Positions 6,022-10,764 of a stretch of DNA of 64,000 nt are shown in pieces. Made by a program: the position numbers and the translations under genes. The DNA lies in sequence record NC_048053.1. One strand, written 5' to 3'. The notes under the pieces are model-generated. The model made no database searches, was not told where the DNA came from, and saw only the letters and a list, made by a program, of their open reading frames with translations. Each line of letters opens with the position of its first letter. The first letter of the stretch is position 1.

Positions 6022-6615
6022 ATGTCCTCTGTTTCATGTCTGGTGATTCGCTGTAATCAAAAACAATTCGAAGCGAAAGAAATCTTTTCGTATCTTCGAA
6101 TCAAAGCAAAACTTTCTACCGTCTCTGCTGTTATGCTTGCTGTCGAAGACGCAGGACGCTATTCGTTTTATATTCTGCGCGATCTGTTTTATTTCCGCAA
6201 CGTGTCGAAATCGAAAACTGACAAGCCGTTTACTATCAAGTGGACAGAACATCCGGAACCGGTAACGCAAAACCAATTGCTTGATGGCAACCGCTGGCAC
6301 CTGACGCAGTTTTTTAATTCCGACCGTGGTTTGGATTCCGGATATATGGTTTCAGAATTGCAGACCGCAACCAATGTTAGCCTGACGCATTGCCAACGTT
6401 TCTTTGTTGATCCGGAAACCACTGTTCCGCGCAATCGCGTTAAGCGTGTTGTTGAGCGCAATCCGTTTTTGAAATCTGCTACGGTTGGTGAAATCATTCG
6501 CGAAATGAATCGCCGTGGTTATGAAATGACTTACGCACCGAAAGAGAACAGCAATGAAAAAGATGGGAACGGTAACGGTTCTGTCGTTGAAGGACAAAGC
6601 GCCGAAGAACGTTGA
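6022..6615 (+). CDS. hypothetical protein
   Basis: ggag RBS before ATG 6022. Confidence 0.7.
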   Translation: MSSVSCLVIRCNQKQFEAKEIFSYLRIKAKLSTVSAVMLAVEDAGRYSFYILRDLFYFRNVSKSKTDKPFTIKWTEHPEPVTQNQLLDGNRWHLTQFFNSDRGLDSGYMVSELQTATNVSLTHCQRFFVDPETTVPRNRVKRVVERNPFLKSATVGEIIREMNRRGYEMTYAPKENSNEKDGNGNGSVVEGQSAEER

Positions 6616-7195
6616 TTTGGATATCACGCCAGTTTCTACTGATGACGAGTGGGGCGCGTTAAGTCCTTTTAAACTTGGCCCTTGTCGAACGGCAGGCGGT
6701 ACTTTGTTTTTCAATTTCGAAAATCTCTGGCAGTACAGTAAAGTTTATCCGGAACATCTGGAATCCGATAACGATCTTCTTTGCGGCGAAGTTGCTGCGG
6801 AGTGGTTCCGCTGGCATATGAGCGGCGCACGCGAAAGAAGAGGCATTCGCTATCCTATGGGGAAAGGAGCAAAAGCAAAATTCTCCGTTTGGGGAAACCT
6901 GCGCCTTTCCTATATCTCAGCACGTAAAATGATTTACGTTCCTGAATATTCAAAACTGCTTTTGGCTAACACGAAGTTCCGAAAACTTTTAAGGCAGTAC
7001 AATAAAGGCGCTAACATTGTCATTCGTGATTACGATACTTACGATGCTTTGAAAGCGTATGCGAATAAAAAAGAACATCATCCGTTTCTTTATGCGTTGA
7101 ATAATCCTGATAAGAAATTCGGTCACGGTTTCGTTATTGGCATGGCGCTGATGTTGAACCCTGTTCCCGGATGGTATGATCAATGGGTGCTGTAA
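6554..7195 (+). CDS. conserved hypothetical protein, possible NADAR-like fold
   Basis: LSPFKLGP..GG..F.NFENLWQYSKVY echoes NADAR SNF...EHYFQAQK; RYPMG; ARKMIYVPEY. Confidence 0.45.
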   Translation: MKKMGTVTVLSLKDKAPKNVDLDITPVSTDDEWGALSPFKLGPCRTAGGTLFFNFENLWQYSKVYPEHLESDNDLLCGEVAAEWFRWHMSGARERRGIRYPMGKGAKAKFSVWGNLRLSYISARKMIYVPEYSKLLLANTKFRKLLRQYNKGANIVIRDYDTYDALKAYANKKEHHPFLYALNNPDKKFGHGFVIGMALMLNPVPGWYDQWVL

Positions 7196-7884: not shown

Positions 7885-8201
7885 TGTTCAGCACAATGAT
7901 GTTTATTCGTGTCTTCGGATCTAGTTACATGATCAATCCTACTCTGATTGATGCCGGACGAAAAACTGTCGTAGTAGATCCGAAAGATTTTGTTCCACTG
8001 ATTCCCGGCTTTGTTGTCGGTGCGCCTTACGCTATTTGCCCGTTGCCTAAAATCTTGAAAAAGGTTGGGTGTGATTGGCGAGTAAAATCTTTCGAGCGCC
8101 TCGAATCGGGCAAATGGCGCTACTTGTTTCATTACCTTAATACGGAATGGACAGTAGAAATGATCGTGGGAAAAGATTATGGGAAAGTTATCAAAGGCTG
8201 A
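7884..8201 (+). CDS. hypothetical protein
   Basis: TAATG coupling. Confidence 0.65.
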   Translation: MFSTMMFIRVFGSSYMINPTLIDAGRKTVVVDPKDFVPLIPGFVVGAPYAICPLPKILKKVGCDWRVKSFERLESGKWRYLFHYLNTEWTVEMIVGKDYGKVIKG

Positions 8202-9348
8202 TCAGATTCGTCATGCGCAGGCGATGGATCTAATCAATAGTGATAAACCTCTCACGTTCGATCAGAAACTTTTTGTGTATGAAAACTATTTCGAAAGCGC
8301 TACCAGTAACGTGCGTGAACTCGGAAGTTTTCATACACCTCTTTCTTACGCGTGGGATTTTGAATTAGATATTCAAGGATATGGATCGCTCGTTGACCTG
8401 TGCGCAGGCACGGGCATTTTGTCGTTCTGCTACAGACACCGCATGAAATACTATCATCCGGATGAAGTGCCTACGATTGTTTGTGTGGAAATAAATAAAG
8501 AATACTGCGACATAGGCAAGAGACTTTTGCCCGAAGCAATTTGGGTAAACGATGATGCGTTGACTCACGATGTTTTGCAGTATCTTGATCCGTGTACGAA
8601 ATTTAAGAATGCGATAAGTAATCCACCATTCGGATATTTGAAAACGTCCGAACATATGGGAAAATATCGCGGCAAGGATTTTGAATTTCGAATCATAGAG
8701 CGTGCGTCTCAAGTCGCGGAATATGGTTCGTTCATTATCCCACAACAAAGCGCCCCGTTCACATATTCTGGAACGAGACACTATCAGGAACGAGATAGCA
8801 AAAAATATATCAACTTCCACAAAGATACTGGCATCGAATTAACGGCTGGTATCGGCGTAGATAGTTCCGTCTACAAAGATGAATGGAAAAATACTTCGAT
8901 ACTCTGCGAAGATGTACAAGCAGACTTCACGAAGGAGCCAAACAGAATGAAGCAACGATTGAAATTGATGCACGGCGACACGCTGGAAAAAATCAGAACG
9001 ATTCCTGATACCAGTGTTGACTTGGTAGTGTTCAGTACCGTTAATAAACGTTGGACAGATCCGATTCAAATGCAGGAACTCTATGAAGAGTTTATGCGCG
9101 TGAAAACTGATAACGGAATCATCATCGTTACAACCGGGCATCGTTTAGATCCTAAAACGTATCATGCGCTGATCAAAAAGCACTGTCCTAAAAATGGAGT
9201 GGTGTTAGATCCTTATATGCTGCGCGGATACACCGGATACATTTGCGCGAAACTCCAACTCAAATACATAGGCATAGAGCAAGATCCTCTGTACTATTCG
9301 ATTTGTAAAAGTTTCATTGTTGATGCGTATAAAAAGTTCAGTCAATAA
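8179..9348 (+). CDS. SAM-dependent amino (N6A/N4C) DNA methyltransferase, gamma-type motif order, with C-terminal degenerate beta-MTase-like domain
   Basis: motif I DLCAGTGIL precedes motif IV NPPF; C-terminal LMHGDTLEKIRTIPDTSVDLV...VLDPYMLRG...YIGIEQD. Confidence 0.8.
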   Translation: MGKLSKADQIRHAQAMDLINSDKPLTFDQKLFVYENYFESATSNVRELGSFHTPLSYAWDFELDIQGYGSLVDLCAGTGILSFCYRHRMKYYHPDEVPTIVCVEINKEYCDIGKRLLPEAIWVNDDALTHDVLQYLDPCTKFKNAISNPPFGYLKTSEHMGKYRGKDFEFRIIERASQVAEYGSFIIPQQSAPFTYSGTRHYQERDSKKYINFHKDTGIELTAGIGVDSSVYKDEWKNTSILCEDVQADFTKEPNRMKQRLKLMHGDTLEKIRTIPDTSVDLVVFSTVNKRWTDPIQMQELYEEFMRVKTDNGIIIVTTGHRLDPKTYHALIKKHCPKNGVVLDPYMLRGYTGYICAKLQLKYIGIEQDPLYYSICKSFIVDAYKKFSQ

Positions 9349-9361
9349 TTAAAGGGAACGT

Positions 9362-9562
9362 ATGAGGAAAACTCCGGTTGCTGTTTGTATAAATTCTGCG
9401 TTGCTTCGTGGAGCAACACTTGCCACATATTCTCCGTTTCAGGAAGAAACTTATAACTGGCATTACGTTCCTATTTCTGATGAGGAATTTCTACGTCGCG
9501 TGTTGGCAAACGGCAAGTCTGTTATATTAAAGGATCGACGATGGGTAAGCTCAAAGTTTTAG
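9362..9562 (+). CDS. hypothetical protein (66 aa)
   Basis: ORF with aaggg RBS. Confidence 0.55.
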   Translation: MRKTPVAVCINSALLRGATLATYSPFQEETYNWHYVPISDEEFLRRVLANGKSVILKDRRWVSSKF

Positions 9563-10764
9563 TTGGCGATTGCAAAAAGAGTTTAAAAAAGATTCCCGAC
9601 GCCAGTGTTCAAATGTGTGTGACAAGCCCTCCTTACTACGGTCTGCGTGATTATGGAAATCCCGCGCAGATCGGATTAGAGGAAACTCCGGAACAGTACA
9701 TTGAATCTTTGGTAGAAGTTTTTCGCGAAGTGAAACGCACTCTTAAAGATGACGGCGTGTTGTGGTTAAACATTGGCGATAGCTACTACAATCCTTCGAG
9801 AAAGAAACACAAAAATCTCAAAGGAAAAGATTTGATTGGCATTCCGTGGATGCTTGCTTTTGCTTTGCGTCAGGATGGCTGGTATTTACGTCAGGACATT
9901 ATCTGGCAGAAAACATCGCCTATGCCTGAAAGCGTTCGTGACCGCTGCACCGGAAGCCACGAATACATGTTTCTTCTCGCTAAGTCTCCGAAATATTATT
10001 TCGATAACGAGGCGATCAAAACTCCTGTTAAGCAGGATTGGGGAACACGTAATCGCAAGGATGGGAAGTATCACAACGAAGGAACCGGATTGCAGCCACA
10101 TTCCGGATTAGAAAAAAGTTATTCCAAAGCGAACAAGCGAAGTGTTTGGACGCTCGCGCCTCAGCCGTTCAAAGGCGCACACTTTGCAGTCTATCCACCG
10201 GATTTAATTCTGCCTTGTATTCTCGCAGGATCGAGAAAAGGCGATACTGTTTTAGATCCGTTTGGCGGTTCCGGAACAACGGCGGCAGTAGCGAAATATT
10301 TAAATCGCAATGCAATTCTTTGCGAACTGAATCCGGAATACGCAAAAATAATGCCGCAGCGTGTCGAGAGTGTTCTCGCAAACTACGCTGCAAAGAAAAA
10401 ATCCCCACTTACTTTATTACGCAAGCCAAAAAATTTGCGAAAAGTTAAGAAGGGAAGTGCCGATCTTGTTCTCGTAGAAAAATACGATCTGCCTATCTCT
10501 GAAATCTCACGAATCAAATCTGACAATGGTTCTGCTTTTGTCTTGGATAGAAAACTTTCAGTAAAAGAACTCACTGAACTTATTCTGTCGAACACAACGG
10601 AAGGACAAACAGTTTTCTCACCAAACATTCGAAAAGGAAGAATCGGTGTTGTGTGCGCTAAACTGAATCGTCGTCTGATTGGAATCGGTCATAAGCATTA
10701 TGATGAGGCCAAAGAGAAGATCGTTAAGAGCTATCGCAGGCACTATAAAGAACAATCCGCGTAA
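9541..10764 (+). CDS. beta-class DNA methyltransferase (N4C/N6A) with C-terminal degenerate second MTase-like domain
   Basis: VTSPPY catalytic motif, then LDPFGGSGTT SAM motif; GIPWMLAFALRQDGWYLRQDIIWQK typical of the family. Confidence 0.9.
   Translation: MGKLKVLVGDCKKSLKKIPDASVQMCVTSPPYYGLRDYGNPAQIGLEETPEQYIESLVEVFREVKRTLKDDGVLWLNIGDSYYNPSRKKHKNLKGKDLIGIPWMLAFALRQDGWYLRQDIIWQKTSPMPESVRDRCTGSHEYMFLLAKSPKYYFDNEAIKTPVKQDWGTRNRKDGKYHNEGTGLQPHSGLEKSYSKANKRSVWTLAPQPFKGAHFAVYPPDLILPCILAGSRKGDTVLDPFGGSGTTAAVAKYLNRNAILCELNPEYAKIMPQRVESVLANYAAKKKSPLTLLRKPKNLRKVKKGSADLVLVEKYDLPISEISRIKSDNGSAFVLDRKLSVKELTELILSNTTEGQTVFSPNIRKGRIGVVCAKLNRRLIGIGHKHYDEAKEKIVKSYRRHYKEQSA

What the first reader, a model, noticed from the sequence alone, without database searches (positions are those of the whole stretch)
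8179..10764. Two methyltransferases of different classes share the same catalytically dead MTase-like tail
Seen: the gamma-order MTase (8179; DLCAG then NPPF) and the beta-class MTase (9541; SPPY then FGGSG) each end in a ~120-130 aa domain (about 8947-9348 and 10405-10764). These tails resemble each other: SVDLVV/SADLVL, RVKTDNG/RIKSDNG, ICAKLQLKYIGIE/VCAKLNRRLIGIG, IVDAYKK/IVKSYRR. They look like a miniature beta-MTase lacking the PPY motif, the FxGxG motif and the target-recognition domain. Known: several beta-class MTases act as dimers. Inference: the dead domain is a docking or pseudo-dimer module that may join both enzymes into one DNA-modification complex, or it is a decoy for modification-dependent defences.
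Basis: partly seen in the sequence, partly recalled or inferred. Interest (0 to 1): 0.65.

Follow-up and report, generated by a model that had tools for sequence, protein, structure and literature searches.

The report
Dead mini-methyltransferase tails on two phage methyltransferases
Two neighbouring DNA methyltransferases of a Dickeya jumbo phage, from different enzyme classes, each end in the same conserved, stripped-down, catalytically dead copy of a beta-class methyltransferase core; it is a real helper domain, but what it does is not yet known.

Summary
The window is Dickeya phage vB_DsoM_JA29, a 253 kb jumbo phage.

- **The two enzymes.** gp235 (8179-9348) is a gamma-order methyltransferase. 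gp237 (9541-10764) is a complete beta-class methyltransferase.
- **The tails are homologous.** Each ends in a 119-133 aa tail. The tails match by BLASTP (E 3e-12) and by profile comparison (98.9%, E 1.4e-17). Predicted folds superpose at TM 0.81 and 2.1 Å.
- **What the fold is.** It is the SAM-binding half of a beta-class methyltransferase. Motif IV, the FxGxG loop and about 130 central residues (beta6-7 and the target-recognition region) are missing.
- **The tails are maintained.** They are under purifying selection and form one clade among beta methyltransferases, with moderate support. As fusions they occur only in these phage lineages.
- **Distribution.** Gamma+tail fusions also occur in diverged phages with no beta+tail gene within 6 kb.
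- **Dimer contacts.** The deleted region aligns with the part of CcrM that carries the canonical beta-class dimer contacts.

I therefore favour a non-catalytic accessory domain acting in cis. A bridge between the two enzymes stays possible but untested, because the complex predictor was unavailable.

One extra finding: all nine gamma+tail genes keep a Met codon with a Shine-Dalgarno-like site exactly at the junction. The scan's note s1-415664 is this same stretch read from another window.

The parts
8179..9348 (+). gp235: gamma-order MTase domain plus dead mini-beta tail (389 aa)
   Evidence: ORF list. Annotated as HOU08_gp235. PHROG 3820 covers residues 1-257. Full-length AF2 model has pLDDT 91, pTM 0.78.
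8179..8946 (+). gp235 catalytic domain. Motif I DLCAGTG is at 8395-8415 and motif IV NPPF at 8620-8631.
   Evidence: Motif positions. The fold matches M.TaqI, CamA and type I HsdM. About 250-aa stand-alone homologues exist in RB43/RB16-like phages and in bacteria.
8932..8949 (+). Shine-Dalgarno-like AAGGAG (8932-8937), a 9-nt spacer and an in-frame ATG (8947-8949, Met257) at the domain junction. This is a candidate internal start or a relic of the fused gene's start.
   Evidence: All 9 gamma+tail genes have the Met. Anti-SD pairing is -4.3 to -8.6 kcal/mol, in the top 0.5-8% of codon positions of each gene and as strong as real starts in the window.
8947..9348 (+). Tail 1: 133-aa minimal beta-class MTase core. 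Pseudo-motif IV FSTVN lies within 9016-9045, pseudo-motif I DPYMLRGYTG at 9208-9237, and the retained motif II IGIE at 9268-9279.
9362..9562 (+). gp236: small 66-aa ORF between the two genes, overlapping the start of gp237
   Evidence: ORF list. RefSeq calls it 'putative methyltransferase', but it has no Pfam or PHROG match. It is 42-45% identical to small ORFs at the same place in two relatives.
9541..10764 (+). gp237: complete beta-class MTase plus dead mini-beta tail (407 aa)
   Evidence: Pfam N6_N4_Mtase 1.9e-57 over residues 23-270. PADLOC type II MTase profile matched at positions 13-282 of 289. Closest solved structures are TTHA0409 and CcrM.
9541..10404 (+). gp237 catalytic domain. SPPY is at 9625-9636 and FGGSG at 10261-10275.
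10405..10764 (+). Tail 2: 119-aa minimal beta-class MTase core, more eroded than tail 1. Pseudo-motif IV VEKYD lies within 10459-10488, pseudo-motif I SPNIRKGRIG at 10618-10647, and IGIG at 10678-10689. pI is 10.1.

Best explanation
Each tail is a self-folding alpha/beta domain of about 125 aa, descended from a beta-class amino-MTase. It keeps only the cofactor-side half of the fold: N-terminal strand, beta4, alphaD, beta5, motif-X helix, beta1, alphaA, beta2 and a C-terminal helix. It has lost motif IV, the glycine loop, the beta6-beta7 hairpin and the target-recognition region, so it cannot methylate. This much is shown. It is kept by selection as a non-catalytic accessory domain. I infer that it works mainly in cis with the catalytic domain it is fused to, packing against that domain through a very short linker. 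I think its likeliest role is to help hold or position DNA. [quoted passage not shown] The module probably arose once, by internal deletion of a beta MTase gene that then fused behind the gamma MTase gene. The conserved junction Met and ribosome-binding-like site mark the old gene start. It was then copied onto the neighbouring beta MTase in the Salmondvirus lineage.
For: - Homology and fold are established.
- The tails are under purifying selection. Amino-acid identity is 51-81% among the closer relatives (35-42% to the most distant one tested, L002) while synonymous sites are saturated. Where dN/dS is computable it is 0.09-0.31 for the tails against 0.04-0.15 for the catalytic domains.
- The gamma+tail architecture is conserved down to 40% identity, in different phage backgrounds.
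- The full-length gp235 model has pTM 0.78. I estimate about 0.66 would be expected if the two domains were uncoupled. The junction is only about 5 residues long.
- Most tails are basic (pI 9-10; tail 2 net +13), while the gp235 catalytic domain is acidic (pI 5.5).
- The former glycine loop now carries conserved Arg/Lys.
- Tail 1 and tail 2 form one clade among 97 other beta-MTase sequences, SH-aLRT 84.
- Both tails have the same deletion boundaries.
- The junction Met and SD-like site are present in 9 of 9 fusions.
Against: - No DNA-binding or contact evidence exists. No coordinates were available, so cis packing rests on one pTM value.
- The two most diverged tails (P0011, P0012) are not basic (net charge 0). 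Only four structural residues are invariant across all 14 tails, so a charge-based DNA role is not universal.
- Clade support is moderate and both tails sit on long branches.
- Tail 1 scores higher against some canonical beta MTases (38% identity, 92 bits in two pieces) than against tail 2 (45.8 bits).
- Similar deletions arose independently in stand-alone ORFs, so shared boundaries could be convergent.
Confidence: 0.45

Rival explanations
1. Docking module. The tails pair with each other, with the gp237 catalytic domain, or with a free tail made from the internal start. This would join gp235 and gp237, or dimerise each enzyme, into one DNA-modification complex.
For: The same module sits on both enzymes of adjacent genes, and the pair is syntenic in all closer relatives. 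Beta-class MTases work as homo- or heterodimers with division of labour, sometimes with a dead partner (PMC7544214). The conserved internal Met and SD-like site could give a free tail protein.
Against: The tails lack the segment that carries the canonical beta dimer contacts. Gamma+tail fusions exist with no beta MTase or second tail within 6 kb on either side in three diverged lineages; these contigs are fragments, so a distant partner is not excluded. Tail 1 evolves much faster than tail 2. No complex prediction could be run.
Confidence: 0.25
2. Adaptor to a third component. The shared tail targets both enzymes to the same place or partner, for example the replisome, the capsid interior or a host factor.
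For: This is inference only. An identical module on two otherwise unrelated enzymes is what a common address tag would look like. The tail also persists where gp237 is absent.
Against: No candidate partner was identified, and neighbouring genes have no informative families.
Confidence: 0.12
3. Cofactor-sensing domain. Tail 1 still binds the adenosine part of SAM or SAH and regulates the enzyme.
For: In the closer relatives, tail 1 keeps counterparts of four adenosine contacts of beta MTases: the N-terminal GD, the motif-X His, the motif-I aromatic residue and the motif-II Glu. The contacts are listed for N4CMT in PMC10406627.
Against: The first glycine of the loop is Leu, and the Ser/Thr that hold the methionine carboxylate are Arg and Tyr. 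The Asp varies (D/N/E). L002, P0011 and P0012 lose several of these residues, and tail 2 has lost all of them.
Confidence: 0.08
4. Functionless remnant of decayed beta MTase genes that became fused to their neighbours.
For: Internally deleted beta MTase ORFs are common debris in phage genomes and metagenomes, for example the Staphylococcus Silviavirus 114-aa ORF, P0159, P0221 and P0237.
Against: The tails keep an intact reading frame, a confident compact fold and 35-81% amino-acid identity despite saturated synonymous sites. They are retained across lineages that differ by about 60% in sequence.
Confidence: 0.05
5. Decoy for modification-dependent or MTase-sensing host defences.
For: None found.
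Against: PADLOC matches only ordinary type II MTase profiles. Fusion to active enzymes is not what a decoy needs.
Confidence: 0.03

Closest known systems
METTL14 (with METTL3), MTA9 (with MTA1): catalytically dead beta-class MTase paralogues
   Same: They are of beta-class descent, have an eroded motif IV and serve as non-catalytic partners of an active MTase (PMC7544214).
   Different: Those are separate polypeptides that, in the structures and homology models described in that review, pair with the active subunit as MTase-domain heterodimers. Here the module is cut down to about 125 aa, lacks beta6-7, the TRD and the interface segment, is fused in cis, and also sits on a gamma-class enzyme.
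C-terminal domain of CcrM
   Same: It is a non-catalytic domain of about 90 aa joined by a short linker to the C-terminus of a beta-class MTase. It binds the non-target strand and is needed for activity (PMC6787082). gp237 has the same layout.
   Different: The CcrM domain has a SAND/PWWP-like beta fold. The tails have a Rossmann-like MTase half-fold. DNA binding by the tails is not shown.
Canonical beta-class N6A/N4C DNA MTases (Pfam PF01555; CcrM, TTHA0409, M1.HpyAVI, M.MboIIA, M.RsrI)
   Same: They give the best sequence and fold matches. The order of retained elements is the same: pseudo-IV, V/VI, X, I, II.
   Different: The tails have no (D/S)PPY, no FxGxG, none of the ~130 central residues and no TRD, so they are not enzymes.
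Internally deleted stand-alone beta MTase ORFs (Staphylococcus Silviavirus 114-aa ORF; metagenomic P0115, P0167, P0168)
   Same: They lack the same central region.
   Different: They are stand-alone ORFs. The metagenomic ones are each known from one or two short contigs, several keep DPP and/or FxGxG, and they group with canonical MTases rather than with the tails. They look like independent and probably recent deletions.
Tandem or fused double MTases (M.FokI-type, phage multi-MTase fusions)
   Same: Two MTase-fold modules lie in one chain. This includes long beta-MTase proteins with 4-5 matched stretches in the large search.
   Different: As far as is known (my knowledge for M.FokI; not checked for the hits), both modules there are complete enzymes. 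Here the second module is a dead minimal core.

Membership tests
Beta-class N6A/N4C DNA methyltransferase (PF01555), applied to the tails | Motif IV (D/S/N)PP(Y/F/W) after beta4 | tested here: not met
   Tail 1 has FSTVN and tail 2 has VEKYD at that position. No member of either tail family has PPY.
Beta-class N6A/N4C DNA methyltransferase (PF01555), applied to the tails | Motif I FxGxG cofactor loop | tested here: not met
   Tail 1 has YMLRG, with the first Gly replaced by Leu in all close relatives. Tail 2 has NIRKG in JA29 and NIGKG in relatives, with no aromatic residue.
Beta-class N6A/N4C DNA methyltransferase (PF01555), applied to the tails | Central beta6-beta7 hairpin and target-recognition region between motif VIII and motif X | tested here: not met
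   The E-INS-i alignment shows that gp237 residues ~80-210/218 have no counterpart in either tail. PHROG 67 positions ~201-294 are unmatched.
Beta-class N6A/N4C DNA methyltransferase (PF01555), applied to the tails | Pfam gathering score over the domain | tested here: inconclusive
   Tail 1 scores 37.8 bits (cut-off 26.7) but only over profile positions 169-220 of 221. Tail 2 scores 18.1 bits, below the cut-off.
Beta-class N6A/N4C DNA methyltransferase (PF01555), applied to the tails | Fold of the class I MTase core with beta-class topology | tested here: met
   For the retained half only. The top 38 PDB matches are all beta-class MTases, TMq up to 0.79.
Dead beta-class partner subunits (METTL14 / MTA9 type) | Eroded catalytic motif with a retained MTase fold | tested here: met
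   The fold is only partly retained.
Dead beta-class partner subunits (METTL14 / MTA9 type) | Dimerises with an active beta-class subunit through the MTase-domain interface | not testable with these tools
The segment aligned to the CcrM interface residues 110-134 is absent from the tails (PMC6787082), which argues against the canonical mode.
CcrM-type C-terminal DNA-binding domain | SAND/PWWP-like beta fold | tested here: not met
   The tail model is an alpha/beta MTase half-fold.
CcrM-type C-terminal DNA-binding domain | Non-specific DNA binding needed for activity | not testable with these tools
   Only indirect evidence: basic pI in 12 of 14 tails.
Gamma-class amino-MTase (gp235 residues 1-256) | Motif I before motif IV (NPPF) with no TRD between them, and a fold like M.TaqI or HsdM | tested here: met
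   DLCAGTG is at 73-79 and NPPF at 148-151. Foldseek hits include M.TaqI, CamA and type I M subunits. A DNA substrate rather than RNA is not shown.

The most novel reading that the evidence does not exclude
The mini-core is a portable, catalytically dead 'partner' module. It would be made both fused and, from the conserved internal start at Met257 of gp235, as a free 15-kDa protein. The copies would associate with each other to assemble a gamma-class and a beta-class enzyme into one two-specificity methylation machine. That would be a minimal, phage-evolved counterpart of METTL14 or DNMT3L that works across MTase classes.
Probability: 0.15. Interest if true: 0.75.

Novelty: new variant of a known kind. 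Interest (0 to 1): 0.52.

Why it matters
Dead methyltransferase paralogues that help active ones are known in eukaryotes (METTL14, MTA9, DNMT3L). A 125-residue remnant kept by selection and attached to enzymes of two different classes would show how small such a helper can be, and that phages build them too.

It also has a practical side. UniProt names gp235 an N-4/N-6 methylase, which fits the only Pfam hit above threshold, the one in the dead tail. Its real catalytic domain is gamma-type and scores below Pfam cut-offs. Class and specificity predictions for such proteins are therefore misleading.

The conserved junction start site offers a clean, testable case of a possible nested gene created by gene fusion.

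Tried and rejected
- **Complex prediction.** There is no verdict on binding.
- **Word search.** The search with tail 1 alone found no short relatives.
- **Locus search.** The search for related loci with the tail-1 family alignment had no searchable block. With single queries it found only near relatives.
- **Whole-contig search.** The genome search on the metagenomic loci is not possible, so the full contigs of P0010 and P0012 were not checked for a distant beta MTase.
- **Alignment for the tree.** hmmalign to the tail profile did not span both halves of canonical MTases. I replaced it with an E-INS-i alignment. P0011 and P0012 tails were left out of the tree because they aligned poorly there.
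- **ESM Atlas.** It gave only ordinary N6_N4_Mtase clusters.
- **Literature.** Searches for a described inactive MTase domain in phages, or for RB43-type enzymes, found nothing. The JA-phage paper says nothing on DNA modification beyond listing a 'DNA adenine methylase'.
- **Stand-alone mini ORFs.** The contexts of P0115, P0167 and P0168 are contigs of 1.5-3 kb and uninformative.
- **False leads.** P0107 is an end-of-contig fragment of a gp237-type protein, not a free tail. The Psychrobacter phage hit is a canonical full MTase.
- **Rejected readings.** Decoy (no evidence) and pseudogene remnant (selection and fold argue against it).
Full report
**Where we are.** The stretch is identical to Dickeya phage vB_DsoM_JA29 (Salmondvirus, 253 kb). 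Window 8179 equals record position 197502. The region holds three same-strand ORFs. gp235 runs 8179-9348 (389 aa), gp236 runs 9362-9562 (66 aa) and gp237 runs 9541-10764 (407 aa). The own-genome search finds exactly two tails and one complete beta-class MTase domain in the whole phage.

**The two enzymes.** gp237 residues 1-~285 are a complete beta-class amino-MTase. Pfam N6_N4_Mtase scores 1.9e-57 over 23-270, with SPPY at 29-32 and FGGSG at 241-245. A 289-position type II MTase profile is matched almost end to end. The nearest solved structures are TTHA0409 and CcrM. gp235 residues 1-256 are a different enzyme. PHROG 3820 matches them, DLCAGTG (73-79) precedes NPPF (148-151), and the fold is closest to M.TaqI, CamA and type I HsdM. 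Most homologues of this domain are stand-alone proteins of about 250-290 aa. They include the RB43/RB16 group of T4-like phages and some bacteria. In both enzymes the tail is therefore an addition to an otherwise complete protein.

- The tails align at 30% identity (E 3e-12).
- Family profiles built from related phages match at 98.9% probability, E 1.4e-17.
- Tail 1 folds confidently on its own (pLDDT 92, pTM 0.87) into strand-helix-strand-helix-strand-helix-strand-helix-strand-helix.
- Its PDB neighbours are only beta-class MTases, always with a large gap where their middle part lies.
- Among predicted viral structures, the only contiguous matches are gp235 itself and a 131-column stretch of the JA11 homologue of gp237 (TM 0.81, rmsd 2.1 Å). 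I take that stretch to be its tail. Every other hit with TMq of 0.5 or more needs about 200 or more columns.

**What is kept and what is lost.** I aligned the tails with 93 beta-MTase sequences of 190-345 aa from the large search, the gp237 catalytic domain and the Psychrobacter phage enzyme. Both tails lack the counterpart of gp237 residues ~80-215 and part of the loop after motif IV.
- Kept: the N-terminal strand, beta4, the following helix, beta5, the motif-X helix, beta1, alphaA, beta2 and the last helix.
- Lost: (D/S)PPY, the FxGxG loop, beta6-beta7 and the recognition region.
- Tail 1 in the closer relatives still has counterparts of four adenosine contacts (GD, His, aromatic residue, motif-II Glu). 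These contacts are listed for N4CMT in PMC10406627.
- The first loop glycine is Leu, and the carboxylate-binding Ser and Thr are Arg and Tyr. These residues erode further in L002, P0011 and P0012, and tail 2 has none of them.
- Catalysis is excluded. Cofactor binding is unlikely for tail 2 and uncertain for tail 1.

**The tails are functional, not debris.** Related environmental phages carry the same gene pair in the same order. Synonymous sites between them are mostly saturated. Tail identity nevertheless stays at 51-81% among the closer relatives, and at 35-42% to the most distant one tested (L002). Where dN/dS can be computed it is 0.09-0.31 for the tails and 0.04-0.15 for the catalytic domains. 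Tail 1 evolves clearly faster than its catalytic domain. Tail 2 evolves about as slowly as its own.

**Distribution.** I searched 1.84 billion representative proteins with a profile of all 14 tails. Contiguous whole-profile matches came only from the two fusion families and six short stand-alone ORFs. Three of those ORFs also lack DPPY. The stand-alone ones group with canonical MTases rather than with the tails. Each is known from one or two short contigs, so they look like independent deletions. Staphylococcus Silviavirus phages carry another such 114-aa ORF. Gamma+tail fusions reach down to 40-49% identity (P0010, P0011, P0012). P0012 lies in a T4-like neighbourhood with thymidylate synthase, ribonucleotide reductase and gp25. 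None of the three has a beta MTase or a second tail within the 6 kb read on either side. The beta+tail form was found only in Salmondvirus-like phages.

**Origin.** In a maximum-likelihood tree (109 rows, 140 columns; P0011 and P0012 left out), tail 1 and tail 2 together form one side of a branch with SH-aLRT 84. Both have the same deletion boundaries. This favours a single origin followed by copying between the adjacent genes. Support is moderate, however, and both tails sit on long branches. Tail 1 also scores higher against some canonical MTases than against tail 2, and similar deletions arose elsewhere independently.

**A junction start site.** All nine gamma+tail proteins have a Met exactly where the tail begins. 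That is also where canonical beta MTases begin. In all nine genes the 15 nt upstream pair with the anti-Shine-Dalgarno sequence at -4.3 to -8.6 kcal/mol. This places them in the top 0.5-8% of codon positions of the same gene, and it equals or exceeds real starts in the window (-2.9 to -7.0). The encoded residues differ between lineages (KE, QE, RG, PE, EG, RE) while the GGAG/GGAA/GGGG core stays. This is what a fusion by loss of the upstream stop codon would leave behind. Its retention suggests that the tail may also be made as a free protein. That is inference. The site was noticed after the fact, and purine-rich linker codons are a possible confounder.

**How it may work.** The gp235 full-length model has pLDDT 91 and pTM 0.78. 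By my estimate, two confidently folded but uncoupled domains of 256 and 133 residues would give about 0.66. The junction is about five residues long. This points to packing in cis, but no coordinates or error maps were available. Twelve of the 14 tails are basic, and tail 2 has ten invariant Lys/Arg including the former cofactor loop. The gp235 catalytic domain is acidic. The two most diverged tails are neutral, so a simple charge role is not general.

The module is shared, beta-class enzymes use dimers with division of labour (PMC7544214), and a free tail may be made. It loses from two points. The tails lack the segment aligned to the CcrM dimer contacts (Asp113, Phe130, His134). Fusions also exist that have no gp237-type neighbour. 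I could not run the complex prediction.

**Verdict.** The function is open, and I rank the readings in this order:
- a cis-acting accessory role, 0.45;
- a bridge between the two enzymes, 0.25;
- an adaptor to a third partner, 0.12;
- a cofactor sensor, 0.08;
- a functionless relic, 0.05;
- a decoy, 0.03.

Dead MTase paralogues are a known kind. This minimal, fused, cross-class form is a new variant of it. The scan's note s1-415664 is the same stretch read from another window and adds nothing independent.

Noticed in passing
window 8932-8949: A conserved in-frame Met with a Shine-Dalgarno-like AAGGAG 9 nt upstream sits exactly at the gamma-domain/tail junction of gp235. It is present in all nine gamma+tail genes even where the encoded residues differ. 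It may be an internal start that gives a free tail protein, or a relic of the fused gene's start.
   Followed up: partly
window 9362-9562: gp236 (66 aa) is called 'putative methyltransferase' in RefSeq but matches no Pfam or PHROG family. Small ORFs 42-45% identical lie at the same place in two relatives (L005:5183-5332, L008:5181-5327). Its end overlaps the gp237 start.
   Followed up: partly
window 8179-8946: UniProt names gp235 a 'DNA methylase N-4/N-6 domain-containing protein', which fits the only Pfam hit above threshold, the one in the dead tail. The real gamma-type catalytic domain scores below every Pfam cut-off. This is an annotation trap for class and specificity prediction.
   Followed up: yes
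window 6554-7195: A DUF6939 protein (Pfam E 1.1e-6) lies upstream of the MTase pair and is syntenic in the four closest relatives examined (L005-L008).
   Followed up: no
window 9541-10404 compared with P0100-P0104: The central part of the gp237 catalytic domain (the region expected to recognise the target) differs between relatives by two indels of about 30 aa each. JA29 lacks one segment, and P0100 and P0101 lack another. This hints at different target specificities.
   Followed up: no
L016:1483-1827 (Staphylococcus phage vB_SauH_SPJ2): A 114-aa ORF is an internally deleted beta MTase that keeps DPP and FIGSG but lacks everything between. Short MTase fragments lie next to it. It is unrelated in origin to the Dickeya tails.
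   Followed up: partly
L023:384-776, L025:52-453, L024:1419-2027: Stand-alone metagenomic mini-MTase ORFs (P0115, P0167, P0168) have the same central deletion and no DPPY. P0168 carries an extra 80-aa C-terminal extension. The contigs are too short to judge their context.
   Followed up: partly
L002:7163-8203: In the diverged phage contig that carries P0010, the gene after the gamma+tail MTase is a metallophosphatase-like protein rather than a beta MTase.
   Followed up: no
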